A DNA stretch of 64,000 bases. Source: Lytechinus pictus. Lineage: Eukaryota. Below the pieces are notes generated by a model. The model was given only the letters and a program-made list of their open reading frames with translations, ran no database searches and was not told where the DNA came from. The stretch covers positions 19,654,001-19,718,000 of the forward strand of contig NC_087258.1 of the NCBI RefSeq assembly GCF_037042905.1, read 5' to 3'. Each line of letters starts with the position of its first letter. Positions within the stretch are counted from its first letter, which is position 1. Below, one piece after another: positions 26,039 to 52,495 of the stretch. The translations under genes were made by a program, and so were the position numbers.

Positions 26039-27651
26039 AGTCCCAGTGCAAAAGTTATGTTTGACAGGTTTCCTTTAATGCGCTCAGGGAACAAGCGTGA
26101 TCGCTTATTGGCCAATTCCTATAGCTGTGTGCGCTGGGCAAAGCTAGCTAGCTGGGCCTGGGCTAGAATATTTGATTTATTCGTTTGATGGATAATTTTG
26201 TGAGGCAAATGCTGTTGGAATGAGGGATGAAGGAGTTGACAGACATTTTCAAGTGTAAGTTTAAACTGCATTAGGTCTTCCATGTAGTGCAGTTTTTCAC
26301 CTGCATGTGGTCGGACCTGACAAGTATTTTGAATTTGAAGAGAATTAAAAAAAGATATCCAAATATTTTTTATGATTTTGTTGATAAATCGCGGTAACTC
26401 GATATGACCAAAATATTGTCGATGAATTTTTTTTTTGGACAAACAAGTTCTGCTTTATATTGTTATAAATTTACACCAACTCGGAATTCCTGATTAAAGT
26501 TGGGACCCAAATGCCTGCTTTTCATGAACAAGCACAGATGAAAACCTTACTTTCATTTCCCCTTTCCCTATAATCTCACAGAATTGCAGCTCATTAATAA
26601 TGAATTTTCAGACTCGGTGATATACCATATTATATTTTGCTGGCAAAAACAAACTAATATTGACATCAAATATTGACTAGCACTAGTAGAGAAAATGTAT
26701 GCTTGGAGAGGACAGGTATCTGTCTTGTTATTTTGCAACATAATTATTGCGGATGTAACAAGTAGTATATTAGTGTTTTATAATTCAAGTGGGCCTATAT
26801 TACAAGACTACACTGATGGGAAAGGTGCATTATTGCCAGTGAACCATATGGAAAATAGTGTACATTCTCTATGGGAGACAAAATGTCCCATACATGTACA
26901 TTACTTGTCCTTATTTCATTTTATTTAGAGACTGTGATTAGATGGTTTTGCCATGTAACATTAAACTTGCCTTTGAGATACTTGAGTGCTATGAATTTCA
27001 TCACACTGAATTACAAGTTGTCAAATACAAGTTGTCAAGTATCGATAACAACCAACTGGGGACTGTCCTCTGTTGTGTGCTTGGAATGTGCGTGTATGAT
27101 TTAGGTTTGAACCTGGATGTATCTTTAACAATTCAAAAGAGGACTGTTATTGGGTGTATCGATAACACACATCCTCTAATGTATGCTTGGAATGTGTGTA
27201 AGGTTGGAACTTGGATATGCAGTACATTTATCTTGTACAATTCAACTGAGGACTGTCCTCTGTTGATCTCTCAGACGATGTCTTCATAAATGCTGATTTT
27301 TTTTTTAAATGAGCGGGTCGAGGGATCCTTTTCTGGTCAGATATGGATTGCCAGATATATATCCTATCCACTGGTTATTCGACCCCCGAATTTCATCCTT
27401 ATTTTTTATGAATTTTTTGAAAGTGCCAATTTTACACGCGATCGAGTCTATGGGAGATGAATTAGGCCTGTGATACCTATAATCCAAAATAGGGGAAAAT
27501 TTCAGTTTTCAGTATGTCGATGAAATATGCACTAAAACTTGTCAATAATAATTACTTTTCACTAATATTCATATTTCAATCATGATGTGATGCAGTAAAG
27601 AGGCTGAATTGGGCTATGCAGGTAACTGTAGTCTGCTGCTTGTATGTGGAT

Positions 27652-28910
27652 AGGCAAAACTTGTGTGTGTTGTAAGTTACATCCATATCTACCGACGATT
27701 ATGCTGTGCTAGCTGTGTTATTCTAGTTCGATCGTTACCAGCTATAGAGTTAGGTATATCGAGTGATAACTTGCGAAAAGATGGCTGTTGCAGTTGGAAG
27801 AGGAATGACGAGGAGTGAATTGAAGAATCTGACAGAAGACGAATGGTGTAAACTTTATGGGGATTATAGGCATAACTTGTGTGTGTTGTAAGTTACATCC
27901 ATATCTACCGACGATTATGCTGTGCTAGCTGTGTTATTCTAGTTCGATCGTTACCAGCTATAGAGTTAGGTATATCGAGTGATAACTTGCGAAAAGATGG
28001 CTGTTGCAGTTGGAGAGGAATGACGAGTGAATTGAAGAATCTGACAGAAGACGAATGGTGTAAACTTTATGGGGATTATAGGCATAACTTGTGTGTGTTG
28101 TAAGTTACATCCATATCTACCGACGATTATGCTGTGCTAGCTGTGTTATTCCAGTTCGAACGTTACCAGCTATAGAGTTAGGTATATCGAGTGATAACTT
28201 GTGAAAAGATGGCTGTTGAAGAGGAATGACGAGTGAATTGAAGAATCTGACAGAAGACGAATGGTGTAAACTTTATGGGGATTATAGGCATAACTTGTGT
28301 GTGTTGTAAGTTACATCCATATCTACCAACGATTATGCTGTGCTAGCTGTGTTATTCTAGTTCGATCGTTACCAGCTAAGTTAGGTATATCTAGTGATAA
28401 CTTGTGAAAAGATGGCTGTTGCAGTTGGAAGAGGAATGGCGAGGAGTGAATTGAAGAATCTGAAAGAAGACGAATGGTTTAAACTTTATGGGGATTATAG
28501 GCATAACTTGTGTGTGTTGTAAGTTACATCCATATCTACCGACGATTATGCTGTGCTAGCTGTGTTGTTCTAGTTCGAACGTTACCAGCTATAGAGTTAG
28601 GTATATCGAGTGGTAACTTGCGAAAAGATGGCTGTTGCAGTTGGAAGAGGAATGGCGAGTGAATTGAAGAATCTGACAGAAGACGAATGGTGTAAACTTT
28701 ATGGGGATTATAGGCATAACTTGTGTGTGTTGTAAGTTACATCCATATCTACCGACGATTATGCTGTGCTAGCTGTGTTATTCTAGTTCGATCGTTACCA
28801 GCTATAGAGTTAGGTATATCGAGTGGTAACTTGCGAAAAGATGGCTGTTGCAGTTGGAAGAGGAATGACGAGGAGTGAATTGAAGAATCTGACAGAAGAC
28901 GAATGGTGTA
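27652..28910 (+). repeat. Tandem array of six ~206-216-bp units, each containing the upstream region and first ~23 codons of the His-Me endonuclease ORF
   Basis: Unit marker AACTTGTGTGTGTTG at 27658, 27874, 28086, 28292, 28505 and 28718; the last unit runs directly into the ORF. Confidence 0.93.
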
Positions 28911-29258
28911 GACATTATGGGGAGAAGATTAGAGAGAAGCACAGTGGGTCTGAGGGGGACCAAATATCTCAGTGTTGGATTTTCCATTGGAGGAGCAAGA
29001 AAGGCTCAAAATACAAGTGTATGGATAGGCAAGACTGTGCGCGCAGCAAACAGGGTGGCCTATATGATCAGTATTGCCGGGTCTTGGTCCTTGCCATCTG
29101 AGCTTGAAGTGTCCCATTTGTGCTGTGAGCCTGCTTGTGTTAGACCAGCACATTTGGTACTTGAAAGCCATGAAGAAAACAAGTCTCGACGAAATTGCAA
29201 TTCTTTGCAAAGATGTCTTGGGCACGGAACCAGACCATTATGTATCTTTAAAGTTTAA
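28841..29258 (+). pseudogene. His-Cys-box / His-Me finger homing-endonuclease-like gene (I-PpoI type), one frameshift
   Basis: SHLCCEPACVRPAHLVLESHEENKSRRNC...CLGH...PLCI matches the zinc-binding loop motif SHLCHNxxCxNPxHLxxExxxxN; one extra G at 28954-28958 relative to copy 2. Confidence 0.85.
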
Positions 29259-30139
29259 CTTAGATCCATTAACTTAGTAAAAAAAGTTAGTATTGCTCCT
29301 TCCTTAGACTAGGTTCCCCCAGCCCAATAAGGTAGGCTTATGGTAGGCTGCAACTTTAGGCATAACTCTGTTTTATGTTACAATTATCTAGTACAACTTC
29401 ATGTGTTTATAGGCCTGATCTAAATCTAGACCGAATTGACCGTGGGCTAGATACCTAGAAGTTATAGGCCAAATAAGAGTTAGATTAGGTCAAGATCCAG
29501 ATCTATCCAGTCTCCATGGTCTAAAGTTAGGTCCATAAGAAGGTAGACTAGACCAGGTCTAACTTAGCAAAACAATTGCCTGTAAAAAAGTCAGGGAGAG
29601 CCTAATCACTATCACTCTCACTTATAGTGTTCAACAGGGTTCTATCATAGTTATGATCTATTGTCTTGTTCCAACTGTCCTTTCATATAGCATTCTTTCG
29701 AGTTTATGTCCATTCGCTTCCTCTCGTATAGTCTGAACCTATACAGGCGATGAAGAGCTCTTGCACGCTTGACATGAATCCTCTTTGATCTGTCCCTCCA
29801 ATAATCCCGTCTTTTCTGCATCTCTTTCAGTCTCTTCACGACTCTGGGACTTGTGAGACAGTCGAACCTTTGCTGCAGCAGTCTAGGATAGGATGGATGC
29901 CCCTGCTCCGTTATTGGTTAAGATAATAGCAGAATGGTCTCTACCTTCTTATGCATCGTCTGAAACCATCTGCTGTAACCAAATCAAGGCTTCTTAGCAC
30001 AACTCAGAAATACGAGTCGATGAATAGTGCATTTAGCACCACTTATCCAAAACATACTAAAACCTTTACCAGGAACTATGAAGGTAGAGACCATGCATAA
30101 GAACAGTCTGTATTCATTGTCGATCAACAAAGGTATTAT

Positions 30140-30635
30140 ATAATGGTACATGGGCACATTCTTTTCGTACAAAGAACTGTTACAAAGCTATTAATCGCTT
30201 TCAACATGTTGTTGATCCTACGGTACCAGAAAACGATGATGATCCATTGGCTAAAGTCCGGTATTTGATCGATCACATTAATTCAACGTGTGAACAGGTT
30301 TACCAGCCATTCCAAAACTTGGCGATTGATGAATGAATGGTATGTGCCAAGGGACGTTTTCGATTCCGCATGTTTATTCGGGACAAGCCAACCAAGTTTG
30401 GTTTTAAGTTGTGAATTTTAGCACAATCTAAAAACGGTTATACTTAATACAAGTTCGATGTCTATGCAGGTAGAAGAGTCATAGGGAAGTTGCAACACGG
30501 GTTTGCCTTTTAAGTTTTTACAAAATTTGTGTAGGGCTAGAGTGTCAAGGATATCATTTGTACTTCGATAATTTTTACACCACAGTGGGTCTTCTTCAAG
30601 AACTAAAGCATGAGGGATATTGGCATGTGGTACAG
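30140..30635 (+). pseudogene. piggyBac (PGBD4-like) transposase catalytic-core fragment
   Basis: DPLAKVRYLIDHINSTCEQVYQPFQNLAIDE*M...DKPTKFGFK...GYHLYFDNFYTTVGLL...ACGT with several stops and frameshifts. Confidence 0.9.
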
Positions 30636-30752
30636 CCCTTGCAACCATTATGCACAATGGATGCGATGCTTCTATTCACTCCCTGCCACAGAGATGTCTC
30701 AAGGAATATTGTGAATACCTTCTTCTTGAAGGAGTGGGTAACTTGTGAAAAG

Positions 30753-31124
30753 ATGGCTGTTGCAGTTGGAAGAGGAATGACGAGGAGTGAATTAAAGAAT
30801 CTGACAGAAGACGAATGGTGTAGACATTATGGGGAGAAGATTAGAGAGAAGCACAGTGGGTCTGAGGGGACCAAATATCTCAGTGTTGGATTTTCCATTG
30901 GAGGCGCAAGAAAGGCTCAAAATACAAGTGTATGGATAGGCAAGACTGTGCGCGCAGCAAACAGGGGGGCCTATATGACCAGTATTGCCGGGTCTTGGTC
31001 CTTGCCATCTGAGCTTGAAGTGTACAATTTGTGCTGTGAGCCTGCTTGTGTTAGACCAGCACATTTGGTACTTGAAAGCCATGAAGAAAACATGTCTCGA
31101 AGGAATTGCAATTCTTTGCAAAGA
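30753..31124 (+). pseudogene. Second His-Me endonuclease copy, 3'-truncated, catalytic His lost
   Basis: Near-identical to 28841-29214; SHLC changed to YNLC; flanked by a ~120-bp direct repeat (30621-30740, 31125-31243). Confidence 0.85.
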
Positions 31125-31539
31125 TGGCATGTGGTACAGCCCTTGCAACCTTTATGCACAATGGATGCGATGCTTCTATTCACTCCATGCCACAGATTGT
31201 CTCAAGGAATATTGTGAATACCTTCTTCTTGAAGGAGTGGGTAAAAAAATATTATGGGAATTGTTATGTACTATTGAAGAATCTATAAATAGAAGTGCCA
31301 GCTGTAATGTACAGTAATCTACATGCCATCCAATGACAATAGATGGATACCTGAATGGAATACCATTGACTATAAGAAGAATGTCTCTACTCAGAACTTC
31401 CAAGCAACTTCACCACTTAGCAGCCAAGCAGAGAACACCTACCTAAAGTCTCAGGTTAAGCATTCATGTTCATGTGTACTTAAGATATAATAGGAATAAC
31501 CAGAGATTATTCCTGTTATTCATTTGAACCGGAGATAAT

Positions 31540-31850: not shown

Positions 31851-32889
31851 GTAATGTTTCCGCCTTTAATAACTGTCTTTATTTTTCATATTTAATTTCT
31901 GTGCTTCGAATACTATCCTATTAATCTCTTGATTCCACGTATATAAAATGACAATGAATGATACACTACCAAATTTTGATCTCCTTTAAGGTGAAGTTCA
32001 GAGATTTTGTTCTCGAAAAGTAAACTTTCTGAGGATTAACCAACGTGAGAAATTCATGATGCAGCGTATATTAGGCTGGGGGTGATGACGCCCCTGAGCA
32101 TATAAAGTGAAGTACATGTAGATGGAGCATTCCAGCCTGCAACTTTTGAAGAAAATGAAGATGCAGCATCCCACTCTGACAGTCAGGAATAGGAAAATTC
32201 AGCAAAACAAGTAAGGAGTTAAACGCACTGGAGCACGGAATGCAAAAAGAAAACATAAATATTCCCTGAAATTCATATTGGGAGAAGCCAGCAAAAAGCT
32301 TCCAGGTTATTAAAGAAGTGGACAAATTTTTGAAAAAGAATCCCACTTTTCCAATCAGAGACTGGATGGTCATAAGGAGATGCATATTTTAACAGGAAAA
32401 TCACTGAGAGTAGGAGTATGGCTTGCAGCTTCATCTGTCTTTGAAAGCACGACATTCAACTTAATCACAGCAAAGACATGTGGATTCATGATTACCAAGC
32501 ATCAGATTGCCGAACTGAATAAAGAAGGCCAGATTCAGGAACGTCAAATGCAGTTGCAAAGACAGAAAATGCTTTCTCAAGAATAATGGCAGTCGATCTG
32601 AAGATCTTTTAAAGATTGAGCTGTCGCCATTTCCTCAAAGAAACAACTTCAGTAGACAAAACAATTGCAAAGTTTGCAGTGGCTTTAAATTCTGCCTCTT
32701 CTTGATTTATTCAATAAGAAAAAAAATCTTTATACAGGTGTTCTGTTTATCACCTTGAGCTTATTAAAAGGAATACAATAAAGAAATAAGTCCCTTCACA
32801 GGTGTTCATCTATTTTCTTGTACTTATTTCAACATTTAGTTACAGGTCGGCATTCTGTCTGAAATTATTTGATTTCCTTATTTAGGTTT

Positions 32890-33501
32890 TACTTCCCTTT
32901 TCAGTTTTTGCCAAGGAACGTGGGGCCATGGCAACTCCACCAAGGAATAGCCAACCTATTCTTTACTTTGGAACCGTTTTTTGACAAAGACATGATGAAC
33001 CACATAATGAGGGAGACAAACCGATATGCGGAGGCCTTGTTGGCAGATGAGTCAGTCATCGATTGGATCGAAAACCACCCACACTCCAGATTCAAGAAGT
33101 GGCCCGAAAATGGGGTAACTGCGGCACTTATCAGGAAATATCTTGGCTTGAGTCTGAATACGGGGCTAGTACGGAAGAAGAGCTTGGCACACTATTGGTC
33201 AACGCAGCCTAGTCAACCCACACCATTTTTCAATTCTGTTATGCCATTATTGCTATATGTTCTCATCAACAGAATGATTCATGTAAATGACAATGCTACC
33301 GAAGGGCAGAGAGGCGAAGAGGGGTTTGACCCATGGCATAAGGTGAGACCAGTACAGGACAGACTCAACGATACCCTCAAGAGGCATTATGTCCCCACAC
33401 AAAACATCAGCATCGCCCAGTCGATGATCGGAATGAAAAAACGTATTGTGTACATTCAGTACTTACCAAACAAGCTTCATGTCAAGTTTGGTATAAAATA
33501 G
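32890..33501 (+). pseudogene. piggyBac (PGBD4-like) transposase N-terminal-to-core fragment
   Basis: FFDKDMMNHIMRETNRYA...LGLSLNTGLVRKKSLAHYWS...TPFFNSVM...FDPWHKVRP...ISIAQSMIGMK...QYLPNK..KFGIK; the first catalytic DE has decayed to AQ. Confidence 0.9.
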
Positions 33502-35065: not shown

Positions 35066-35216
35066 GCCAAGGAGATTGAGCACACTAGAAGTTCCAAAGC
35101 ATCTATTCTGTCACCTCTGTGCCTGTCTTTGTAGGCAATGCTACAATAATTATTTACAGGGGTCAACACTCTACAAGCATTCGCTTCTTAGATCTTTATG
35201 TTAATGATAACGCTTT

Positions 35217-35850
35217 ATGGGTCATCAGGGTCTCTCCGTCCGCCGCCGCACCCACATCTCTCAACGCCTCCCAGATGATGTTGACCAGAAGGTGACAAAT
35301 TTTCAGAGATTCGTAATCAAGATGCATCGTCAGCATGACTACCCTCTTTCTAGGATCGGCAATGCTGACCAAACTCCTCTGACGTTTGACATCCCACGCC
35401 ACATCACCGTGGCTGCCAAGGGGTCGAAGTCTGTCAACATCACAACAACGGGAGATGAAAAGGATCGATTTACCGTGATGCTTTCCTGCACCGCGGATGG
35501 AAGAAAGTTACAGCCATACGTAATTTTCAAAAGGAAGACTCTGCCAAAAGACAAGTTCCCCACTGGCATCTTGAAAGATGAAAGATTTGTTGAAGATTGG
35601 GTCAAGTGTGTTTGGGGAAGCCGTGCAACGAGTCTCACCAAGCGACGCAGTCTTGTAGTTCTAGACGCGTTCCTGTGCCACAAGACGGAGGGAGTGAAGA
35701 CGACGATGCGGCGATCATACCTGGAGGTATGACCTCGATTCTCCAACCTCTAGATGTTCGTGGAGGGAGTCCACAATTTCACCAAGACGGGCCGGCAGTG
35801 GAAGGCAGATCTTCCAACTATCTGCACCTGGATCCTGGACGCAAATTTCG
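35217..35850 (+). pseudogene. pogo/Tigger-family (DDE_1) transposase fragment with internal deletions
   Basis: GLSVRRRTHISQRLP...IGNADQTPLTFD...TTGDEKDRFTVMLSCTADGRKL.PYVIFK...LVVLDAF..H...IIPGGMTSILQPLDV. Confidence 0.9.
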
Positions 35851-36892
35851 ACAGTAATTAATTACTGCTTATTTAGAGTTGAAAAGCTAGGGGAAAAAAA
35901 TGTGGCGCAAGTAAGGAACGTGCCGATTTGAATGGGTGATTTTCCCGGTAATGTTCAGGTCTTTTTTTTTTTTAAGTCCAAAAGTCGGGATGGGATGTGC
36001 CTTATAAACGCGTGCGCCATATACACAAACTTTATGGTATTTCAATATATTGTATCTGGTTTGAATCATAAATATTCAAACATCAATGTAATTCCTCTTG
36101 AATTTATCATAAAGCAATATACCCTACATAAATTAAATCATGTATGCTCATTGGTTTAAATAGCATCATGTGACCAGACCTATTCTCACTATTCTGTGAT
36201 GTTGAAAATGAAACGCCCACTGAAGAAAAATTGCTGTGACGTCAATGAGGGAATAGTGCACTATTCCATAATTGACGTCACAGATCGTGACGGCGCAGGT
36301 GTAGCATGTTTTTATGCCCAGGCAGTGAAAACGCCCGGAAATGCTAAGACGGAAAAAAAATGTCGTTCAGGCATTTCCGTCCGCCCGGACGTAAAAAACG
36401 TTTTTGCCCGCTGAAAATGTCTGTTTCCGGAAATTATGTCCGCATATATTTTTTTCAGCGACTGGAGTACAGGCTACGATTTTTTTTTGGCAACTGGAGT
36501 ACAGGCTACGATTTTTATGGGCGACTGGATCGGAAGCTATGATTATTTAGGGTGTCTGAATCACAGGCTATCTGGTAATGGTGTCCGTGGAGTGCTTGCG
36601 AGAAAGTAAGTCAATCATATGTTGTTTGAAGGTTTGCATGGTGGCATGTACAATCGCTGATGTGGTTTACGCTACACCATGTGGAGTATTATAGAAAACC
36701 GTGGATAGAAGAAAAAAGAAAAAGAAATGGATAGGAAAGAAAGTGGAAATTTGAGAGTTATCTTACTTGAATGTAGTCCTGAAAAGGACTGTAAACCAGA
36801 AGAGATTGATGAGTTGAAACAGCTTGAGTAGTAGGATGGATGAGGAGATGCTGGCTTGAGTCGGCGAGTAGAGATGATGAGCAGAAGCAGCC

Positions 36893-38272: not shown

Positions 38273-38305
38273 AGACGGACAGTCAACCTGCCCGAAACGT
38301 TGAGT
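38265..38305 (+). ncRNA. Minimal type-I hammerhead ribozyme in the Penelope pLTR
   Basis: ACTC-CTGAAGA-C-GGACAG-TCAAC-CTGCCC-GAAAC-GTT-GAGT: CUGANGA/GAAA core, stem I ACTC/GAGT, stem II with one mismatch, palindromic ACGT stem III. Confidence 0.75.
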
Positions 38306-38860
38306 CTCTCTACTGCTTCTGCTCATCAACTCTACTCGCCGACTCAAGCCAGCAACTCCTCATCCATCCTACTACTCAAGCTGTTTCAACTCATCAATCT
38401 CTTCTGATTTACAATCCTTTTCCGGACTACATTCAAGAAAGATTACTCTACTCTCAAATTTCCACTTTTTTGCATATCCATTTCTTTTTCTTCTTCTTCC
38501 ATCCACTGTTTTCTATAATACTCCACATGGTGTACGGTAAACCATTAAAGTCAATCATATTTTTTTCCAGATATTTGCTACTATATTTGTAAATTACAAT
38601 CCACTGTTTCTCGTAGGAGTTTTCTCCATCATGATATTCTAGTTGATTTAGTTTTTATTCTAGATTGATATGCAAGTACCTCGTGTTACTTGTTGCGTGT
38701 GAATGACTAGTTTGCCTTGGGTCCCACTTATGTGGTTGGCTATAGTATAGTATAGAATCGTTGAATCGCACATGCTCTGAGTCTCTGATTGATCACAAAC
38801 AGTCCACCAGCACCACATGTTTTCAAGTCATGGGCTTGCTAACGTTAGATCTTCTGCATC

Positions 38861-39113: not shown

Positions 39114-40038
39114 GTAAGTGATTCATGTAATTTGCTCTAACAACGGGCCTTGGCTAAATAGTGCTAGACAGCTGGCGGCCGTCTGTTTTGAGGAGTTTTT
39201 TACCATTTTAAATTTGTCTTTATTTTCTCCTCACACATAGACGTTTCGCGATCGTGCAGCCGCCATTAGGGGGTTAACAATGCAAATCCCCCCCCTCCGG
39301 CTGAATGTTTGTGTAGTTTATCAAGTTTCATAATTGTCAAATCAATTTTTCACTCAGTAGGTTTGCTATTTTAGTTTAAATCAGTGCATAAAGATAAAGA
39401 ATAATCACACATAAGCTACTTCAAGTCCTATTATAATTATTTAATGACATCCTTTTCTTATTCTGTTCTGAGTATTTTTTGTGGGGACACATATTTTCTA
39501 TATTTATCTTTACTTTACAGATGAAACCTATCATGTGCAGAAGACGCAACCACCATCCGAAGCACTTAGACAAGCTGGAAACATCACGTACAAAACTTTT
39601 TTATACCATTACAACATGAATTTTCATACCGTTTATGTTAAAGGCAATAGTTGCTTTCAGCATTTTCTGTTTTTTAATCCGTTTCTTATTGTAAAGATGG
39701 GCTAACCTGTGACAGACAATTGTTTTACAGTCCACAGTACGTACTATGTAAAACCACAGTTATTACTGGATTTAGCATGATGGATATTTGAAGAAAAAAA
39801 ATTGGCATGATAATCCAAGTATTAAGAACAATGAGTCTCCCATACAAGACAACAACAAAGAAAAGAATAGTAAGTGCTCATCTTTAGAATACGTAGGATC
39901 GAGCAGCCGGCCGTTCAACTACTACTAGTGCAGTGCTATCCATACTTCCGTAAACATTCGCTGAATCGTTGTTGAGTGGGCATAATATCTCGAAATAGAT
40001 CTACATTGTTTGAAAGTTACGGTTAGTTTAACTCCGTT

Positions 40039-41458
40039 ATGGGTATGGACACAATGGAAGGGGAAGGTGTAAAACCCTACTCTTTTGAACCGAAATACAC
40101 GGCAGAAGAAATTCTAGAGAGGCGACGCCGACGGCAAAGACAAAATGACGGCAGTGGTAATGGCAGTGCACCACCATCCTCACCGGCTCCAGATCCAGAG
40201 GGTGATCGACTTGCCACTAACGACTGGTGTTTTTGTGATGAATGCACACCAATGGAAACTGTGTTGCAATCTCGATGTTGTGTGGAGCCTGCAAACTGTC
40301 GAAAACATTTGAATGAAAGCATACCATGCATTACAGCCCACGCGGACTTCGTGAAAGTTTGCCTTGAAAAGGCAGTCCTGCGAACAGCACTGGTTGCTCA
40401 ACTTGATATGAGATGTCAGGAACATAACGGCTGAGCTTGAAAATGAGTAGGTCTAACTGTTAACTTCTCAATCTTTTTTTCAACATGTATTCTAGGGTTT
40501 GTAGGCAAATGGCAATGTTTGGGTGGTGCCAGCTACTGAGCTAGATATAAAAACTTGTCAAATGGGGTAGAATCTACATGAATGTACATGTAGATCTAGA
40601 CTCTAAGAGATCTATTATTGATTGTGGATCAGATCATTGAATTCACATATTAGTAATGAATGATTTCTTCAGTGATTCAAATTGTTTTGGTCATATGTGA
40701 AGGTGACATGGCCGAGTGATCTAAGGCGCCGGACTAGCACATGAAGGTCTGGAGTTCGATCCCTGGCCACACTAATGCCCTCGAACAAAGCATTTATTCA
40801 ACTGTGTTCTTTTATCATACCTTATAATAGTTGGAAATGCTATCTGCATTGTTTGAAACAATGTGTGTGTATTTGTTTTTTTTTAGTTTGGGTTTTTTTT
40901 TTCCAAAGGAAAAGTGCAAGGAAATAAAAAGGAAAAGCAAGGAAATAAAGTATTGAAAAGTGCCAGGAACCACATTAACTGTGGAATTAATCAGTGTTTG
41001 TGTTGCGGTTAACGCAAAAATAGGAGGTAAATTGCATACAGTTGTAATTTTTAAATATAAATCAGTACATGTACACTATCAACCTACGATATTCCCATAC
41101 ATGATATGATTTTAGTTGCATTTTTTTTTCTTTGGTTGCAGCAAACAAAAATTTCTTCTGCCTTTGGCTTCAAGTATTAAGCTGTACATGTAGATGTAGG
41201 CTGACTTCTTATTTATTGAAATGTCTTTTTCTCTAACCACCCCCCCCCCCCATCTACAGGTCGTATAGGTATTGTGGTTACAGAATGTTCACCTATTGGA
41301 TTCATGGAGTTCTAGGGCGACGTGTGAGGAGAGTGATTCCAGCTTGCTCTGTCCAACTGATTAGAGACACTTTCCCTTCAGCTGATGGACGTTATGTTGA
41401 ATTTCGCTTTGTACAGGAAGGAGAAGTTGAAGTAGTGCCAGAAGAATATGAAATATAA
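40039..41458 (+). pseudogene. Stand-alone P2X7-ballast-like cysteine-rich gene, copy 1 (exons 40039-40446 and 41260-41458)
   Basis: PYSFEP...WCFCDECTPMET..SRCC...CITAH.DF..VCL, spliced to SYRYCGYRMFTYWIHGVLGRRVRRVIPACSVQLIRDTFPSADGRY; 8-bp deletion frameshift near 40410. Confidence 0.85.
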
Positions 41459-42646
41459 ACAGTATTGCATCTACATGTATGAACCAAAAAAACTTATTTA
41501 GAATTGTGTATCGTAGACTTAATAAAATCACATTCATCCTCCATCATATATTTTCCTTCCTATCTCTTATAGCTCCCACATGTCTTAAAACATCTATCCG
41601 CTGTCAATAAAGGAGAAATACAGGAAGTTGGTAGATTGTATGAATTCACTTGATTACACACACACACTAAATTAAATTAAGGATACCTTTTTACCCTTAA
41701 CATACTGGGTAGATTTGGTAATTGCTAAGGCTAGATGTTGTTTATTCATTTGATATTAAACCATATTCTGACTGGGCGAAACAAGAGGAGATTTTGATGG
41801 GGGGGGGGACCCCCTGATATCTTGGCCGAGGATGGTCTGATGACCATGAAATTTTGTACATACGTTGTTGCACATTAATGGGTTTAACTGTTTTTGGTCT
41901 TCAAAAAAATATGTGATGCTATTCTCAAGAAATAACTTGAATTTTGATATTGTATGTTTATGTGAAACTAGGACTGAAACATTTCTGAATCACTTGTTCA
42001 TGAAGGGTCTAAATATAATTATAAAGAAAAAAACATCATGAACAGAGAAGAGGAATTTCACTAGAGTGACTGGCCATTCACAACCACGCCACTTCAGATT
42101 TATGATGGACCGTGACACAGTAATTGGTCACTTCAAAGGATTGAAGGGCCAGGAATGGCAACCTCTCATGGGTGGATTCTTGAAGCGTACTCAACAAGGT
42201 AAAGCCGTATGTCCCACTGGGAAGCCAGCACTTCAGTAATTGGTCATTTCAAAGGATTGAAGGGCCAGGAATGGCAAGCTCTCATGGGTGGATTCTTTAA
42301 GCGTACTCAACAAGGAAAAACCGTATGTCCCACTGGGAAGCCAGTGGGACGTACTATGTAAAACCAGTTATTACTGGATTTTGCATGATGGATATTTGAG
42401 AAAAAAAAATTGGCATGATAATCCAAGTATTAATAACAATGGGTCTCCCATACAAGACAACAACAAAGAAAAGAATAGTAAGTGCTCATCTTTAGAATAC
42501 GTGGGATTGAGCAGCCGGCCGTTCAACTACTACTAGTGCAGTGCTATACATACTTCTGTAAACATTCGCTGAATCGTTGTTGAGTGGGCATAATATCTCG
42601 AAATAGATCTACATTGTTTAAAAGTTAAGGTCAGTTTAACTCAGTT

Positions 42647-44062
42647 ATGGGTATGGACACGATGGAAGGGGAAGGTGTAAAACCCTACTCTTTTGAACAG
42701 AAATACACGGCAGAAGAAATTCTAGAGAGGCGACGCCGACGGCAAAATGACGGCAGTGGTAATGGCAGTGCACCACCATCCCCACCAGCTCCAGATCCAG
42801 AGGGTGATCGACTTGCCAATAACGACTGGTGTTTTTGTGATGAATGCACACCAATGGAAACTGTGTTGCAATCTCGATGTTGTGTGGAGCCTGTAAACTG
42901 TCGAAAACATTTGAAAGCATACCATGCATTACAGCCCACCCGGACTTCGTGAAAGTTTGCCTTGAAAAGGCGGTCCTGCGAACAGCACCGGTTGCTCGTC
43001 TTGATACGAGAGGGCTTGATGTCAGGAACATACCGGCTGAGCTTGAAAATGAGTAGGTCTAACTGTTAACTTCTCAATCTTTTTTTCAACATGTATTCTA
43101 GGGTTTGTAGGCAAATGGCAATGTTTGGGTGATGCCAGCTACTGAGCTAGATATAAAAACTTGTCAAATGGGGTAGAGTCTACATGAATGTACATGTAGA
43201 TCTAGACTCTAAGAGATCTATTATTGATTGTGGATCAGATCATTGAATTCACATATTAGTAATGAATGATTTCTTCAGTGATTCAAATTGTTTTGGTCAT
43301 ATGTGGAGGTGACATGGCCGAGTGATCTAAGGCGCCGGACTAGCACATGAAGGTCTGGAGTTCGATCCCCGGCCACACTAATGCCCTCGAACAAAGCATT
43401 TATTTAACTGTGTTCTTTTATCATACCTTATAATAGTTGGAAATGCTATCTGCATTGTTTGAAACAATGTGTGTGTATTTGTTTTTTTTTTGTTTGGGTT
43501 TTTTTTTCCAAAGGAAAAGTGCAAGGAAATAAAAAGGAAAAGCAAGGAAATAAAGTATTGAAAAGTGCCAGGAACCACATTAACTGTGGAATTAATCAGT
43601 GTTTGTGTTGCGGTTAACGCAAAAATAGGAGGTAAATTGCATACAATTGTAATTTTTTAATATAAATCAGTACATGTACACTATCAACCTAGGATATTCC
43701 CATACATGATATGATTTTAGTTGCATTTTTTTTCTTTGGTTGCAGCAAATAAAAATTTATTCTGCCTTTGGCTTCAAGTATTAAGCTGTACATGTAGATG
43801 TAGGCTGACTTCTTATTTATTGAAATGTCTTTTTCTCTTACCACCCCCCCCCCCCCATCTACAGGTTGTATAGGTATTGTGGTTACAGAATGTTCACCTA
43901 TTGGCCTCATGGAGTTCTAGGGCGACATGTGAGGAGAGTGATTCAGCTTGCTCTGTCCAACTGATTAGAGACACTTTCCCTGCAGCTGATGGACGTTATG
44001 TTGAATTTCGCTTTGTACAGGAAGGAGAAGTTGAAGTAGGGCCAGAAGAATATGAAATATAA
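42647..44062 (+). pseudogene. Stand-alone P2X7-ballast-like gene, copy 2 (exons 42647-43052 and 43865-44062)
   Basis: Tandem duplicate of copy 1 with different frameshifts (4-bp deletion near 42914, 1-bp deletion near 43945). Confidence 0.85.
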
Positions 44063-44514
44063 ACAGTATTGCATCTACATGTATGAACCAAAAAACTTAT
44101 TTAGAATTGTGTATCTTAGACTTAACAAAATCACATTCATCCTCCATCATATATTTTCCTTCCTATCTCTTATAGCTCCCACATGTCTTAAAACATCTAT
44201 CCGCTGTCATCACTGTCAATAAAGGAGAAATACAGTAAGTTGGTAATGAGATTGTATGAATTCACTAGATTACACACACACACACGTAAATTTGTTGATG
44301 TAACTTTAATAATTAAGGATACCTTTTAACCCTTAACATACTGGGTAGATTGGGTAATTGCTAAGGCTAGATGTTCATTCATTTGATACTTAACCCTATT
44401 CTGACTGGGCTATACAAGAGATTTTGACGGGGGGGGGGCAATTCCCCCCCCCCCCCCCGATATCTTGGCCGAGGATGGTCTGATGACCATGAAATGTAAA
44501 CTTGTTTCTCTCAT

Positions 44515-44832
44515 ATCGCATAGTAACCGGTGACAACAAGACGACAAGGAAGTTTCGACAGGAAGGGATCAATGCGCTCTGGGATACTTACCCTGGACCA
44601 GAGAAGGGAAGACCACGAATCCTGCAGGAGAATCGCCAAGACATTGAGTGGAAATGGCTCAACGAACGACACTTTTGTGTGAAGATTCCAGCCTGCAACT
44701 ATCAATCGAACTGTGTTGTCTGCTCGACTTCGAGGTCAAGGAAGCAGACCTCTCGTCAATGTCGCGAATGTCAGCTACCAATGTGCGAGGACTGCTTTAT
44801 CCGCTTTCATACTGTGAAGATTTATGAATTCA
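44515..44832 (+). pseudogene. piggyBac transposase C-terminal cysteine-rich domain fragment
   Basis: FRQEGINAL...LNERHF...CVVC...RKQTSRQCRECQLPMCEDCFIRFHT. Confidence 0.85.
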
Positions 44833-45239
44833 CTAGATTACACACACACACACGTAATTTTGTTGATGAAACTAAATTAAGGATACCTATAAACCCTTAA
44901 CCTACTAGGAAGATTTGGTAATTGCTAAGGCTAGATGTTGTTCATTCATTCGATATTTCACCCTATTCTGGCTGGGCGAATCAAGAGGAGATACTGATGG
45001 GGGGGGGGGGGACCCCCCCCTGATCTGATGACCATGAAATTCTATACATACTTCGCTGTACATGTACATTAATGAATTCAACTGTTTTTGGTCTTCAAAA
45101 AAAAATTATCTGATGCTATTCTCAAGAAATAACTTTAATTTTGACATTGTATGTTTATGTGAAACTAGGACTGAGACATTTCTGAATCACTTGTTCATGA
45201 AGGGTCTAAATATATTTATAAAGAAAAAAACATGAACAG

Positions 45240-45590
45240 AGAAGAGGAATCTCACTCGAGTGACTGGCCATTCACAACCACGCCACTTCAGATTTATGAT
45301 GGACCGTGACACAGTAATTGGTCACTTCGAAGGATTGAAAGTCCAGGATGGCAACCTCTCATGGGTGGATTCTTGAAGCGTACTCAACAAGGTAAAACCG
45401 TATGTCCCACTGGGAAACCAGCACTTCTTGAGCCCAATTTCACCAACATCCCACTGGAGAGACTGCTCTTGAAAGACCAAAGACTGGACTCTTCTTTTCT
45501 CTAGCGATGAAGAGTATGAGTGGTGGCAATCGTATCTGTCAAGCCTTGTTCAAGTTAATAGGGACAATGCCAGGAAAAGGAAGAGGTATA
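45240..45590 (+). pseudogene. Putative DNA-transposase C-terminal fragment (Sola/DUF7869-like, recalled motif)
   Basis: VTGHSQPRHFRFMMD..VIGHF...WQPL...PTGKPALLEPNF...EYEWWQSYL across frameshifts; partial duplicate at 42045-42345. Confidence 0.4.
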
Positions 45591-46101
45591 TGGCACAAAA
45601 TTAAATTTGGGCCATTCCTCATCCACCAACATATTCTCCACAAGACCTAGGCCGAGATGAGGAACCATCAGGACCAGCAATTGCCCCAGAAATTGCACAC
45701 AAACTGGCTTTGGAAATGGAAATCCCAAGTCACAAACTTATGGACCAAAATTCAGAATAACGGATCTTTCATAAAGCTGTTCGTAAGTCACAAGTGACAT
45801 TACAAACAACCTGTGATCCTTTCTTAGGAATTACGTCAATACCTATGAAAATCTGGTCATTCGTAAAGTCAACGGTAACCTAAAGAACAGCTTTATGAAA
45901 TAGCCACCTGGTATCTGTTATCTTTCTATTAGAGCTACTCTTTATGCCAACACAAGCGGATAAGGACAGACTGAAAAGGGACACTGCCAGCTACATGTAT
46001 ATTAAACAAAGAGCACTTTTGATGAATAAAAGGTGAGCTAGCTGTCTTTTAATTAATATTAGTCTAAAATTCAATTACAACGAAAAGGAACGTAACATTA
46101 C

Positions 46102-47050
46102 ACAAGTGGAATGCCTCTGGCCGTCTCACCTGCATCACGCGATTCAATATAGCAGCAGTGCTGATTTTGAAAATTACTATAACTCGCACAAGATGTTCAG
46201 TGATACTTGGTTACTCTTATTTCCACGTTTTATGAACTAGACCAATACACTTATAGAGATATGATGGCAATTCAACAAATACCCCCAACGTGGCCAAAGT
46301 TCTTTGACCTTACATGACCTTTGACCTTGATCATGTGACCTGAAACTCGCACAGGATGTTCAGTGATACTTGATTACTATTATGTCCAAGTTTTATGAAC
46401 TAGACCAACACACTTTCAAATTTATGGCTGTAATTCAACAAATACCCCAATTTGGCCAAAGTTCATTGACCCTAAATGACCTTTGACCTTGATCATGTGA
46501 CCTGAAACTTGCACAGGATGTTCAGTAATACTTGATTACTATTATGTCCAAGTTTCATGAATCAGATCCATAAACTTTCAAAGTTATGATGGTAATTCAA
46601 CAGATACCCCCAATTCGGCCAAAGTTCATTGACCCTAAATGACCTTTGACCTTGGTCATGTGACGTGAAACTCATGCAGGATGTTCAGTGATACTTGATT
46701 AACCTTATGTATAAGTTTCATGAACTAGGTCCATATATTTTCTAAGTTATGATGACATTTCAAAAACTTAACCTTAGGTTAAGATTTTGATGTTGATTCC
46801 CCCAACATGGTCTAAGTTCATTGACCCTAAATGACCTTTGACCTTGGTCATGTGACATGAAACTCAGGCAGGATGTTCAGTAATACTTGATTAACCTTAT
46901 GGCCAAGTTTCATGAACTAGGTCCATATACTTTCTAAGTTATGCTGTCATTTCAAAAACTTAACCTCAGGTTAAGATTTGGTGTTGACGCCGCCGCCGCC
47001 GCCGTCGGAAAAGCGGCGCCTATAGTCTCACTCTGCTATGCAGGTGAGAC
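46102..47050 (-). mobile_element. Non-autonomous Helentron/DINE-like element, second copy
   Basis: Same ends and subterminal inverted repeats as 7018-8353, with fewer internal units. Confidence 0.65.
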
Positions 47051-47289
47051 AAAAACAGAATGTTCCCGCGAAATTAGTTTAGATGAAAGGGTATGTGGTT
47101 AAAAAAGGTTCTTTGTTGGTATTTCTGAAATTCTTACATTTTTAATTTTGTGGTGAAATAAGCAAATAGATTGTGCATGTATGTTCTTAAACTAGTTGTT
47201 TCATTATTGATATAAAATTCAGGTGCCCGAATTTAGGACTATATATTTTTTTCCTCCTGTCCCCCTTCTCTCGTATACTGGAGAACTCC

Positions 47290-47690
47290 AGTGTGCCTAG
47301 TGACGTCACTCCCTGCCATCACGTCGTTACCTCTGCCACCACAGATGGACCAGCCACAATCGCCCGGCCAGAACCCCACAGGCAGCGTCCCGCCTTTCAT
47401 TCCACCTCCCAACGAAGAAGAAAAGCTGCAGGCGTCCCCGTCTCCTCAGGCTAGTGTTTCTGAGGGCTGCGACCAGTCGTATCTACGTGACATATCACAG
47501 AGCCAGAGGATATCCTGCAGACACCCCCATCCCCACCCTCAGATGATGTTACAAGCTACATGACCAATACGGCAGGACAATGGTGGTACTACACGGAAGT
47601 TACACCAACTGCTTCGAAGACGTTCTCGCCGGCCAAGGGCAAGAGAAGACCACGCAGGCAGCCAGCCTGGTCAAGAGACTACCTGCAGTA
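47290..47690 (+). pseudogene. Probable Gypsy-type pol C-terminal tail
   Basis: Pro/Ser-rich coding-like sequence ending KGKRRPRRQPAWSRDYLQ*, matching the R-x-R-R-x-P-x-W-x-x-D-Y terminus of many LTR-retrotransposon pol proteins. Confidence 0.5.
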
Positions 47691-48834
47691 GGGAGTCGTC
47701 GTGCATTGTTGATGGGTTCAGTTCAATCATTAATTTGTAAAAAGTGTAATTAAGTATGTTATATTTATGTCAATAATTCAATGTTATTGATTATTTTTTC
47801 ATTATAAAATTGTACATGCAACCCTTAAATATTGTCTGCTTCTCTTTGCATTATGTTCGTGTAAATATTAAGTGCAAGTGAAGGTTTGTGTGCATGGCCA
47901 AAATCTGTTTTTTTTACAGCAAAAAAACACCATCCGAAGCACCTAAGGCAAGCTGGAAACATCACGTAAGAAAGTTTTTTATACCATTACAATATTAAGT
48001 TAATTTTTATACAGTTTATGTTAAAGGCAATATTTGCTTTCAGAATTTGCTGTTTTTTTATCCATTTTTTATTTTACTACCTATGACAGACAATTGGTTA
48101 ACAGTCCACAGTACATGTACGTACATGTACTATGTAAGCCACAGTTATTACTGGATTTTGCATGATGGATATTTGAAGAAAAAACATTGGCATGATACTC
48201 CAAGTATTAATAACAATGAGTCTCCCATACAAGACAACAAATAAAAGAATATTTAAGTGCTCATCTTTAGCAAAGTATTATTGATAGGTGGACAATATTA
48301 GGCTAGATTTAATGTGAATGTAATTAAAATCACATTCATCCTCATAATAATCCTCCATCATATATTTTCCTTCCTATCTCTTATAGCTCCCACATGTCTT
48401 AATACATCTATCCGTTGTCAATAAAGGAGAAATACAGTAAGTTGGTAATGAGATTGTATGAATTCACTAGATTACACACACACACAATTTTGTTTGAACT
48501 AAGTTAAGGATACCTTTTAACCCTTAACATACTGGGTAGATTTAGTAAGTGCTATTAAAGGCTAGATGTTATTCATTCATTTGATATTTAACCCTATTCT
48601 GACTGGGCTAGACAAGAGATTTTGACGGAAGGGGGGGGGGGGGGGCATTTTGACCCCCCCCCCGATATCTTGGCCGAGGATGGTCTAATGACCATGAAAT
48701 TTTGTACATATTTCACTGCACATGTAAAGGGTATTGTTGATATGGTTTTCCCCAAAAAAATATGATATATTTAATTTTTGCTAATTTCTGCATACACATG
48801 TACTGCATGAAAATTAGATTCTAGTTATTATTTA

Positions 48835-49545
48835 TTAACTCTTTCAACACGTACTTCGCACCGATGCACGATCGGTGCCGCGCGAACTTCGAATTTCACG
48901 CTCAAACATTCAGTCCATTGTATTTGTGCGATTGTGTTGATTTCCCCGGAGGTGGCAGTTTTCGTTCAGCTTTTATTATCCACAAGGCTTTCGTATGGGG
49001 TCGTTTTCACTATAGATTTACATTGCAAATTTTGGAGAAATACACATATTTTCCAGCTCTTTTAGTATTGCCATCATGGCTCCGAGGAGGTTATTTTCCG
49101 TAGATGAAGCTCGCAAACTTATACTGGCCGGCTCTTCGGAGTCACCTGCTTTTGTCATGGATTCGGAGTCGGAGCATGATGAGCCCATGTCATCTCAACG
49201 CAGTCCCACCCATAGTAATACAGGTGGTGAGTTGGATATCGATGAAGATGAACAGTTTACTCAAGATTCGGACAGTGAGATTTAGGATGATGATGAACAA
49301 GAACAGAATGATAGGGATGATCGTGATGAGACTAATTGGATTGAGATTGGTGAGGGGGAGGAATGGTCTCCTTCATGGAATGAAGACTGCAAGTACTTGG
49401 AAGAAGCAAAACTTCTATTCGATATTAGAGAGAACATGGACCCTCTTCATTATTTCTACCAGTACTTTCCGGAACACTTATTCACTGTGATGACTGAGGA
49501 GACAAATATCTATGCAGAACAGTGTATTCAACGTCCCCTGTTTTG
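48835..49545 (+). mobile_element. piggyBac left end plus N-terminal transposase fragment
   Basis: TTAA-CTCTTT terminus; from 49076 MAPRRLFSVDEARKLI, an acidic tract with an internal stop, then DPLHYFYQYFPEHLFTVMTEETNIYAEQ. Confidence 0.8.
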
Positions 49546-50062
49546 TGGCAAGAGCATGTTCTAGAAGAGAGTACCGGTGGAAGACGAGGGTGACCTTGCA
49601 TGATCTGTCAGATTCAAACCATCTTTACAAGTCTCATCAAAATCAAAGCCTGGATGGAATGATCAGTTATCCTGTCACACAAAATTTGCCTTAATGCTAT
49701 ACTGCAGCTCGACATATAATAAACTTTTTCATAAAAAAGAAATCTTGTCAAGGGTCAGAACAAAACAAAAGAATGGATTGCACCAGTTTGTTGTTTTAAT
49801 CATCAAGATGATGATTTTATGTTGAATGAGCCAAGTGTTGGCCTTTTGGCCATGGTTGACAAATGGTATATTTTTTTCCTTTTATTAATGAGTTGGTCCT
49901 TACTATCCCATGGCGTTGCATGGACTAAACTAATCATTCGAAGGTGTTGAATTATTGTTTTAGTGGCCCAAACAAGGAGTAGTGTGTGCGCAACGCTTTG
50001 TAACCAATAGGAAAATGCACTATATCAAATGTCCATTGTATTGGATTGAATAGGAAAGAACA

Positions 50063-52377: not shown

Positions 52378-52495
52378 TCATGATGGGGCAATCTTGAGAC
52401 GAACGTTGTATATTTGACCCATTGTGTGCTGTATCCGAGATACCACCTCGTCGACTGCCTCCTGCCACGGGCCAGATCCTTGCCGTTTCACCGAT
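52378..52495 (-). CDS. REV1: DNA repair protein REV1, last coding exon (end of the C-terminal domain)
   Basis: TTTCAG acceptor; (R)SVKRQGSGPWQEAVDEVVSRIQHTMGQIYNVRLKIAPS*; phase matches the previous exon. Confidence 0.85.

What the first reader, a model, noticed from the sequence alone, without database searches (positions are those of the whole stretch)
27600..49600. Strand-polarised graveyard of transposon genes downstream of REV1: candidate uni-strand piRNA cluster
Seen in sequence: about a dozen coding fragments from unrelated element classes are packed into 22 kb. They are a His-Me endonuclease, four piggyBac pieces, Ulp1-like, pogo, Penelope, GIN/Ginger-like, P2X7-ballast-like, Sola-like and a Gypsy tail. 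All are truncated or frameshifted, and all read on +. I recognised no transposase or RT fragments in the other ~40 kb. With ten independent insertions, uniform orientation has a two-sided chance of about 1 in 500. REV1 is transcribed on - and stops about 2.8 kb from the block, so read-through would copy every fragment antisense. Established: Drosophila flamenco is a uni-strand piRNA cluster of co-oriented, antisense, fragmented and internally duplicated TEs. Inference: this is a comparable TE-trap locus, unusually rich in DNA-transposon pieces, that may borrow a housekeeping gene's transcription.
Basis: partly seen in the sequence, partly recalled or inferred. Interest (0 to 1): 0.9.

Follow-up and report, generated by a model that had tools for sequence, protein, structure and literature searches.

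The report
Same-strand transposon debris beside REV1
A 22-kb stretch between two sea-urchin genes is packed with broken transposon genes that all point the same way. That pattern is real but only moderately unlikely by chance, and sequence alone cannot show whether it makes piRNAs.

Summary
The window is Lytechinus pictus chromosome CM073239.1, about 19.654-19.718 Mb.

**Observation.** It is largely right.
- Every Pfam- or PDB-recognisable transposon fragment lies in 27.6-49.6 kb on the + strand: His-Me endonuclease x2, piggyBac x4, pogo, Penelope and P2RX7_C x2.
- None lies on the - strand, and none in the other 42 kb.
- REV1 is on the - strand and stops 2.8 kb from the block.
- Ulp1, Ginger, Sola and Gypsy pieces were not verifiable.

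**Independence.** "Ten independent insertions" is overcounted.
- 42% of the block is internal direct repeat.
- The two His-Me copies and P2RX7_C copies A and B are local duplications.
- About 7-9 independent units remain, giving p of about 0.016-0.004. This test was chosen after seeing the pattern.

**Context.**
- The block sits between convergent genes.
- It is present at the same place and size in L. variegatus, with content turnover.
- The one clearly recent insertion there, an LTR element, points the opposite way.
- The block is absent downstream of REV1 in Diadema.

**New clue.** Shared block sequence shows CpG hypermutability at least as strong as the REV1 gene body. The left gene shows none. 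This hints at germline methylation or transcription.

**Verdict.** This is most likely an ordinary, duplication-prone transposon graveyard. piRNA production is untested, at about 0.2. Public L. variegatus small-RNA data could settle it.

The parts
11735..13093 (+). Last exon and stop of the left neighbour gene (uncharacterised LOC129275737-like). It is convergent with REV1.
   Evidence: 93% identical to L. pictus LOC129275737 and 86% to L. variegatus LOC121427273; tblastn places residues 208-666 of P0388 here.
27650..28923 (.). 213-bp tandem array of 6 copies. Each unit contains the first 97 bp of the His-Me fragment. L. variegatus has one copy.
28821..29255 (+). His-Me (HNH-type) endonuclease fragment, copy 1. 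An orthologous copy is present in L. variegatus.
   Evidence: zf-His_Me_endon E 6e-12. L004 51617-51904 E 3e-12.
30088..30640 (+). piggyBac transposase middle fragment (profile positions 80-229), frameshifted. It starts exactly where synteny with L. variegatus breaks (30093).
   Evidence: E 1.8e-6 and 6.7e-4..
30621..31244 (+). His-Me fragment copy 2 (30732-31126) flanked by a 121-bp direct repeat. It is a local duplicate of copy 1 (97%).
   Evidence: E 2.6e-8.
32863..33498 (+). piggyBac transposase N-terminal half (profile 7-155), from a different family than the 30.1-kb piece.
   Evidence: E 5e-28; piggyBat transposase residues 140-268, E 1e-9.
35211..35854 (+). pogo/Tigger-type DDE_1 transposase fragment, frameshifted near 35700 and truncated.
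   Evidence: DDE_1 E 1e-8, profile 1-97 of 177; the reading frame continues in another frame.
36663..38544 (+). 5'-truncated Penelope-like element. The ORF is 36881-38269 (end of RT plus GIY-YIG). It is flanked by 230-bp inverted repeats (36663-36890 and 38313-38544).
   Evidence: 1662 relatives, with full-length ones about 750-800 aa carrying RVT_1, HTH_animal and GIY-YIG.
39548..42344 (+). Element X copy A. It is an intron-containing P2RX7_C-domain gene (exon parts 40027-40431 and 41260-41455), frameshifted at the end of exon 1.
   Evidence: E 7e-7 and 1.4e-9..
42349..45427 (+). Element X copy B, a tandem duplicate of A (93.7% over 2.1 kb), frameshifted. It contains an inserted piece at 44495-44818.
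44493..44897 (+). piggyBac C-terminal Cys-rich tail.
   Evidence: aa 70-111 align to piggyBat transposase 536-578 of 578, E 0.0084. Pfam gave only weak B-box hits.
46102..47055 (.). 163/192-bp satellite. It is also found at 7018-8358 and is absent at this site in L. variegatus.
47191..47750 (+). Unidentified frameshifted ORF remnant. In L. variegatus it is conserved as a 142-aa ORF on the same relative strand.
   Evidence: No Pfam hit.
47925..48764 (+). Element X copy C. It is internally deleted and 81-90% identical to A and B. It is absent at this site in L. variegatus.
49016..49561 (+). piggyBac transposase N-terminal fragment.
   Evidence: profile 1-28, E 0.04; the motif is also visible by eye.
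52384..64000 (-). 3' half of REV1 (residues from about 624 to the end). The last exon is 52387-52524.
   Evidence: IMS_C, UBM. (tblastn). (XP_063965426.1, L. pictus).

Best explanation
The block is an ordinary transposon-rich intergenic tract, a 'graveyard'. It lies between two convergently transcribed genes: an uncharacterised gene on the + strand ending at 13.1 kb, and REV1 on the - strand ending at 52.4 kb.

SHOWN:
- It contains decayed pieces of at least six element families.
- It already existed, at the same place and about the same size (about 21 kb), in the common ancestor of L. pictus and L. variegatus.
- Since then it has changed by insertion, deletion and, above all, local direct (tandem) duplication, which copies fragments without changing their strand.

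INFERRED:
- Insertions persist here because they harm neither gene.
- The uniform strand is a mixture of chance among about 7-9 independent events, propagation by duplication, and after-the-fact selection of a striking window.
- The tract is methylated in the germline, like the adjacent REV1 gene body.

No function is required.
For: - Direct repeats cover 42% of the block against 3.6% for inverted repeats.
- His-Me copy 2 is 97% identical to copy 1, but only 89% to the L. variegatus orthologue.
- X copies A and B are 93.7% identical in tandem.
- The 213-bp unit has 1 copy in L. variegatus and 6 here.
- Both ends of the block are orthologous in L. variegatus at 83-91% identity, the same as REV1 introns (84-87%). 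That indicates neutral decay.
- A complete-LTR insertion specific to L. variegatus (SCAN-gag plus RT_RNaseH, E 1e-34) sits in the opposite orientation.
- In Diadema setosum the next gene is 7.4 kb downstream of REV1 with no transposon ORFs.
- In S. purpuratus the first 10 kb downstream has no Pfam transposon hit.
Against: - After collapsing duplicates, 7-9 orientable units still all lie on one strand (p 0.016-0.004).
- An L. variegatus LINE fragment is also on that strand.
- Coding transposon fragments are confined to the block, although non-coding repeats occur elsewhere in the window.
- CpG hypermutability in the block (69% of CpG against 24% of GpC changed, ratio 2.8) exceeds that of the REV1 body (1.9) and contrasts with the left gene (1.1).
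- In another echinoderm, intergenic repeats are only about 12% methylated against 44-50% in gene bodies (PMC12550476). The tract may therefore be germline-transcribed.
Confidence: 0.55

Rival explanations
1. It is a small uni-strand piRNA source locus. A - strand transcript reads through the tract, either as REV1 read-through or from a promoter in the 49.6-52.4 kb spacer. It yields piRNAs antisense to the trapped fragments. Selection keeps antisense insertions.
For: - All verifiable fragments are antisense to the REV1 direction.
- The tract keeps its position and size in L. variegatus while about 3.7 kb of sampled interior is unrelated between species.
- A continuous domain of CpG hypermutability runs from REV1 through the block to about 23 kb, then fades towards the left gene.
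- L. variegatus has gonadal and somatic piRNAs, and about 3500 small-RNA loci have been called (PMC12479628).
Against: - No small-RNA or transcript evidence was obtainable.
- The tract is 22 kb, against 227-1085 kb for flamenco-like clusters, whose bias is carried only by Gypsy elements (PMC10643416). Here no Gypsy or LTR domain was found.
- The only datable young insertion in L. variegatus is sense to REV1.
- Listed L. variegatus small-RNA loci are 40-4800 bp and sparse, about 255 on a 59.9-Mb chromosome.
- Nine AATAAA/ATTAAA hexamers lie between the REV1 stop and the block, which is about chance level.
Confidence: 0.2
2. The tract lies inside an unannotated - strand transcription unit, such as a long REV1 3' extension or a lncRNA. 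Its strand bias is the well-known selection against sense-oriented transposons, whose polyadenylation and splice signals disrupt transcripts. No piRNA role is involved.
For: - The gene-body-like CpG decay signature is continuous with REV1 and absent from the left gene.
- Antisense bias of transposons inside transcription units is established general knowledge (stated from memory).
Against: - Known antisense biases are modest, about 60:40, and weakest for DNA-transposon fragments. They are not 100:0.
- The REV1 range reported by the look-up tool ends a few bases past the stop codon.
- A sense-oriented LTR element is tolerated in L. variegatus.
Confidence: 0.15
3. The block, or its 30.1-41.3 kb core, arrived as one unit. 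It could be a composite giant element, a Helitron-like carrier of captured fragments, or a segmental duplication. The fragments would then share one orientation event.
For: - Synteny with L. variegatus breaks exactly at 30093, where the first piggyBac piece starts.
- The interior could not be compared over 8.2 kb of unsampled L. variegatus sequence.
Against: - Both ends of the block (His-Me, element X, the 47-kb ORF) are orthologous in L. variegatus, so the block as a whole was assembled piecemeal.
- The exact Penelope ORF occurs once in the collection.
- No terminal repeats bracketing the core were found.
Confidence: 0.05

Closest known systems
Drosophila flamenco and flamenco-like uni-strand piRNA clusters (PMC10643416)
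   Same: - Fragmented, internally duplicated transposon pieces lie predominantly on one strand.
- They sit downstream of a protein-coding gene, and transcription from that side would be antisense to them.
- Position is kept between related species while content turns over.
   Different: - This tract is ten to fifty times smaller (22 kb against 227-1085 kb).
- It is dominated by DNA-transposon and Penelope debris, not Gypsy or ERV elements, which alone carry the bias in flamenco-like loci.
- No promoter, transcript or small-RNA evidence is available.
- A young sense-oriented LTR insertion is present in the sister species.
Transposon-rich intergenic 'graveyards' with nested insertions and tandem duplication (general genome feature)
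   Same: - Truncated and frameshifted pieces of unrelated families are present.
- 42% of the tract is internal direct repeat.
- Divergence between species is at a neutral level.
- The tract lies between convergent genes, where insertions are harmless.
   Different: - Strand uniformity among 7-9 independent units is stronger than such tracts usually show.
- The CpG-decay signature resembles a gene body.
Small-RNA and piRNA loci called in Lytechinus variegatus (PMC12479628 and preprint PMC12139959)
   Same: - They are in the same genus, and on the same assembly as the orthologous tract I fetched.
- More than half of those loci are piRNA-sized.
   Different: - Listed loci are 40-4800 bp.
- Whether any falls in CM031028.1:22,173,499-22,201,663 could not be read, because the stored file is cut.

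Membership tests
Uni-strand (flamenco-like) piRNA cluster | Dense, uniquely mapping 24-32-nt 1U piRNAs from one strand only, with phasing | not testable with these tools
   No small-RNA data could be mapped. The stored L. variegatus locus list stops before chromosome CM031028.1.
Uni-strand (flamenco-like) piRNA cluster | Transposon fragments predominantly on one strand, antisense to cluster transcription | tested here: inconclusive
   Strand uniformity is met: 12 Pfam-positive ORFs on the + strand and 0 on the - strand. The direction of transcription is unknown. The L. variegatus tract holds one young LTR element on the other strand.
Uni-strand (flamenco-like) piRNA cluster | Enrichment of Gypsy-family LTR elements, which carry the strand bias | tested here: not met
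   No LTR or Gypsy domain (rve, RVP, RT_RNaseH, gag) was found in any block ORF of 38 aa or more. The content is piggyBac, pogo, Penelope, His-Me and P2RX7_C.
Uni-strand (flamenco-like) piRNA cluster | Size of hundreds of kb (227-1085 kb in PMC10643416) | tested here: not met
   The block is 22 kb. The whole gene-to-gene interval is 39.3 kb in L. pictus and 28.2 kb in L. variegatus.
Uni-strand (flamenco-like) piRNA cluster | Syntenic position conserved while content turns over | tested here: inconclusive
   - The position and size (about 21 kb) are conserved in L. variegatus, with shared ends and an unrelated sampled interior.
- The first 10 kb downstream of REV1 in S. purpuratus has no Pfam transposon hit.
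- The tract is absent in Diadema.
- Any neutral tract would give the same picture.
Uni-strand (flamenco-like) piRNA cluster | Single long Pol II precursor transcript from a defined promoter | not testable with these tools
   No RNA data were available. CpG-decay evidence for germline methylation is indirect and not strand-specific.
Single multi-copy composite or giant transposon | The same ordered block recurs elsewhere and is bounded by terminal repeats | tested here: inconclusive
   - No bracketing terminal repeats were found.
- The exact Penelope ORF is found once.
- The ends of the block are orthologous in L. variegatus.
- The full L. pictus genome could not be searched.

The most novel reading that the evidence does not exclude
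A compact (about 20-kb) uni-strand piRNA source locus in a sea urchin. It would be fed by transcription running on from the housekeeping gene REV1, would trap mainly DNA-transposon and Penelope fragments, and would be kept at the same position in two Lytechinus species. I found no published description of a mapped echinoderm cluster with flamenco-like architecture.
Probability: 0.15. Interest if true: 0.65.

Novelty: new member of a known kind. Interest (0 to 1): 0.3.

Why it matters
If the tract does produce antisense piRNAs, flamenco-style transposon trapping would not be restricted to Drosophila follicle cells or to Gypsy elements. It would also show that a housekeeping gene's read-through can seed such a locus in a deuterostome.

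If it does not, the case is a useful caution. About 40% of an apparently multi-family, co-oriented block can be local direct duplication. A one-window binomial test also overstates significance.

The CpG-decay comparison between sister species is a cheap, sequence-only proxy for germline methylation. It flags this tract as unlike typical echinoderm intergenic DNA, and that is worth checking in a methylome.

Tried and rejected
- **REV1 exons via PDB.** Searches with short REV1 exon ORFs found nothing. I mapped REV1 instead with full-length urchin REV1 proteins.
- **Is the block inside a REV1 intron?** I rejected this. The terminal exon is at 52387-52524, and no REV1 homology lies to the left of it.
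- **Rfam and tRNA scans of the window.** No hits.
- **Walking further into the L. variegatus tract.** I looked for an orthologous Penelope gene call, but none lies on CM031028.1. 8.2 kb remains unsampled.
- **Transcript or assembly evidence via exact-ORF look-up of the pogo ORF.** It is not on record.
- **Published L. variegatus small-RNA loci for the orthologous interval.** The stored supplement is cut before that chromosome.
- **Strand composition (GC skew) as a transcription signature.** The left gene shows no skew and the block is patchy, so I did not use it.
- **polyA hexamers downstream of REV1.** They occur at chance density and are uninformative.
- **Is P2RX7_C copy A intact?** No in-frame GT-AG join exists, and exon 1 is frameshifted relative to copy B.
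- **An empirical genome-wide background for same-strand runs.** I could not build one, because no transposon library or whole-genome access was available.


Full report
**Origin of the window.**
- The exact 459-aa Penelope ORF of the window occurs once in the public collection, on GCA_037042905.1 chromosome CM073239.1.
- PMC11082199 cites that assembly as Lytechinus pictus.
- Window coordinate equals chromosome coordinate minus 19,654,000.

**Checking the observation.**
- I translated every stop-to-stop ORF of at least 60 aa on both strands. I scanned them against Pfam in four groups: block or non-block, crossed with + or - strand.
- Block + strand: piggyBac DDE_Tnp_1_7 x3, P2RX7_C x3, zf-His_Me_endon x2, pogo-type DDE_1 x1, and RVT_1 plus GIY-YIG x1 (Penelope).
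- Block - strand: only one chance-level hit, Omega-toxin at E 0.009.
- Outside the block: + strand ORFs gave only an artefactual Extensin match to a minisatellite. The - strand ORFs gave IMS_C and UBM, which is REV1.
- Extending the block census to ORFs of 38-59 aa added no transposon family on either strand.
- A Cys-rich ORF at 44493-44897 aligns to the last 43 residues of piggyBat transposase (E 0.008).
- ORF 49286-49561 matches the first 28 positions of the piggyBac profile (E 0.04). The four piggyBac pieces are therefore real.
- I could not verify the Ulp1-like, Ginger-like, Sola-like or Gypsy pieces.
- tblastn with urchin REV1 proteins places the last REV1 exon at 52387-52524 on the - strand. 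The L. pictus REV1 model XP_063965426.1 ends at window 52378.

**Independence of the fragments.** Self-comparison shows that the block is heavily built from local direct repeats.
- 9.3 of 22 kb (42%) lies in internal direct repeats, against 3.6% in inverted repeats. The inverted ones are hairpins and the Penelope flanks.
- His-Me copy 2 (30732-31126) is 97% identical to copy 1. It is bracketed by a 121-bp direct repeat.
- A 213-bp array of six units (27650-28923) is made from the start of the same fragment.
- The P2RX7_C gene sits in an approximately 2.7-kb element, which I call X. Copies A and B of X are tandem at 93.7% identity. A third, internally deleted copy C (47925-48764) is 81-90% identical to them.
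- After collapsing these, I count 7-9 independent orientable units: His-Me, piggyBac middle, piggyBac N-half, pogo, Penelope, X(A/B), X(C), piggyBac tail and piggyBac N-terminus.
- All on one strand gives a two-sided p of 0.016-0.004. This is nominally significant but was chosen after seeing the pattern.
- The genome is about 1 Gb and about half repeats, by my recollection for urchin genomes. H. scabra is 52% transposon-derived in PMC11082199. In such a genome, dozens of 22-kb bins could show this pattern by chance.

**Genomic context.**
- The left neighbour is an uncharacterised gene on the + strand: L. pictus LOC129275737 and L. variegatus LOC121427273. Its last exon ends at 13,093. The tract therefore lies between convergent genes.
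- The 7TM receptor gene next to REV1 is upstream of REV1 and outside the window.

**Comparison with L. variegatus.**
- The stop-to-stop interval is 28.2 kb, against 39.3 kb in L. pictus. Of the difference, 5.9 kb is the expanded 30-bp minisatellite.
- The left flank is collinear up to window 30093. It has one 213-bp unit and one His-Me copy (Pfam E 3e-12).
- The right flank is collinear from REV1 to window 41330. It includes the spacer, the unidentified ORF at 47.2-47.75 kb, and one X copy.
- Identity is 83-91%, the same as in REV1 introns.
- The block-equivalent spans about 21 kb.
- Missing at their sites in L. variegatus are the satellite at 46.1-47.05 kb and the 47.97-49.54 kb segment, which holds X copy C and the piggyBac N-terminus.
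- L. variegatus has its own 4.1-kb LTR element with both LTRs. Its 610-aa gag-pol ORF (SCAN E 3e-11, RT_RNaseH E 1e-34) is on the REV1-sense strand, opposite to everything else.
- It also has a LINE endonuclease fragment on the block's strand (E 0.007).
- The 3.7 kb of sampled L. variegatus interior is unrelated to L. pictus 30.1-41.3 kb. A further 8.2 kb could not be fetched.

**More distant urchins.**
- In S. purpuratus, the first 10 kb downstream of REV1 has no similarity to the block. Its six largest ORFs have no Pfam transposon hit.
- In Diadema setosum, the next gene lies 7.4 kb downstream on the same strand as REV1, with no transposon ORFs.
- The tract is thus at least as old as the two Lytechinus species, but not ancient.

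**A sequence-only proxy for germline methylation.** On the orthologous alignments between L. pictus and L. variegatus, I compared how often CpG and GpC dinucleotides differ.

| Region | CpG changed | GpC changed | Ratio | Test or CI |
|---|---|---|---|---|
| Left gene | 36% | 32% | 1.1 | not significant |
| REV1 body | 51% | 27% | 1.9 | p 8e-7 |
| Shared parts of the block | 69% (66/96) | 24% (37/152) | 2.8 | p 6e-12 |
| 23.4-27.6 kb | 80% (37/46) | 41% (26/63) | 1.95 | 95% CI 1.42-2.88 |
| 13.1-16.5 kb | 46% (31/67) | 30% (14/46) | 1.5 | 95% CI 0.93-2.66 |

- CpG sites changed more often in the block than in the left gene (p 2.5e-8) and than in REV1 (p 0.008).
- CpG observed/expected is 0.81 in the left gene, 0.52 in REV1 and 0.63 in the block.
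- Established knowledge: 5-methylcytosine deamination makes methylated CpG hypermutable.
- In the seastar methylome, gene bodies are 44-50% methylated, but intergenic DNA and its repeats only 10-12% (PMC12550476).
- Inference: the tract has been methylated in the germline, continuously with REV1. This fits germline transcription across it, but equally fits targeted methylation.
- The signal is not strand-specific and says nothing about small RNAs. Sample sizes are modest.

**Literature.**
- Flamenco-like clusters are 227-1085 kb. Their strand bias is driven exclusively by Gypsy elements (PMC10643416).
- I found no published piRNA-cluster map for a sea urchin.
- PMC12479628 sequenced L. variegatus gonad and tube-foot small RNAs and mapped them to the very assembly I used. 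It called about 3500 loci, more than half of them piRNA-sized.
- Its locus list exists as a supplement, but the stored copy stops before chromosome CM031028.1.
- On CM031015.1, the listed loci are 40-4800 bp long, with about 255 on 59.9 Mb. My rough prior that a 28-kb interval contains any locus is therefore 8-10%.

**Verdict.**
However, the independence count and hence the significance are overstated, and several family labels are unsupported.
- The piRNA-cluster reading is neither supported nor excluded.
- I rate an ordinary duplication-prone transposon graveyard at 0.55.
- I rate a piRNA source locus at 0.2.
- I rate a transcribed extension with orientation selection but no piRNA role at 0.15.
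- I rate a single composite insertion at 0.05.
- The decisive test is cheap: look at existing L. variegatus small-RNA data over CM031028.1:22,173,499-22,201,663.

Noticed in passing
window 16580-23431: A 30-bp minisatellite with about 228 copies, 88% matches, G+C 54% and a roughly 1833-bp higher-order period. It is open in most reading frames, which causes spurious Extensin hits. The orthologous array in L. variegatus is only 0.93 kb (L004 48236-49165), so it has expanded about seven-fold in L. pictus or contracted in L. variegatus.
   Followed up: partly
window 54525-55153 (- strand): The REV1 C-terminal-domain exon at 54525-54653 lies at the edge of a 168-bp tandem repeat (54598-55153). The repeat carries extra partial copies of that exon (54743-54823 and 55071-55151, with a further blastn-only copy near 54936-54996). 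These could act as cryptic exons.
   Followed up: partly
L002 28184-28383 (L. variegatus): In L. variegatus the terminal REV1 exon region is duplicated just downstream of the gene (92.5% to window 52280-52479). An ORF there ends in the same C-terminal peptide.
   Followed up: no
window 23.4-64 kb versus 1-13 kb: A domain of CpG hypermutability between the two Lytechinus species covers REV1, the spacer, the block and the flank down to about 23 kb. The left gene shows none. This implies a sharp germline-methylation boundary inside the intergenic region.
   Followed up: yes
window 7018-8358 and 46102-47055: A 163/192-bp satellite occurs twice in the window in the same orientation. It also occurs in an L. 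variegatus REV1 intron (L002 17302-17550) and an intron of the left gene (L004 15767-16555). It appears to be a dispersed satellite-carrying element.
   Followed up: partly
window 50063-50693: A 630-bp palindromic (foldback) element. It is absent at this site in L. variegatus, but copies exist elsewhere there (L002 8109-8720, L004 18370-18915). This suggests a mobile foldback or MITE-like family.
   Followed up: partly
window 39548-42344: The P2RX7_C-domain ORF has a genuine-looking intron, with a polypyrimidine tract and an AG acceptor at 41258-41259. Element X therefore carries, or is, an intron-containing gene rather than a typical transposase.
   Followed up: partly
L006 35032-36816 (S. 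purpuratus, - strand): A 595-aa ORF with a proline-rich repeat and a gag-like C-terminal half (judged by eye) lies 7.5 kb downstream of REV1 and antisense to it. It has no Pfam hit.
   Followed up: partly
window 29719-30093 versus L004 52345-52551: Three short segments next to the synteny break alternate between inverted and direct orientation in the two species. This suggests a small palindromic structure or rearrangement at the breakpoint.
   Followed up: no
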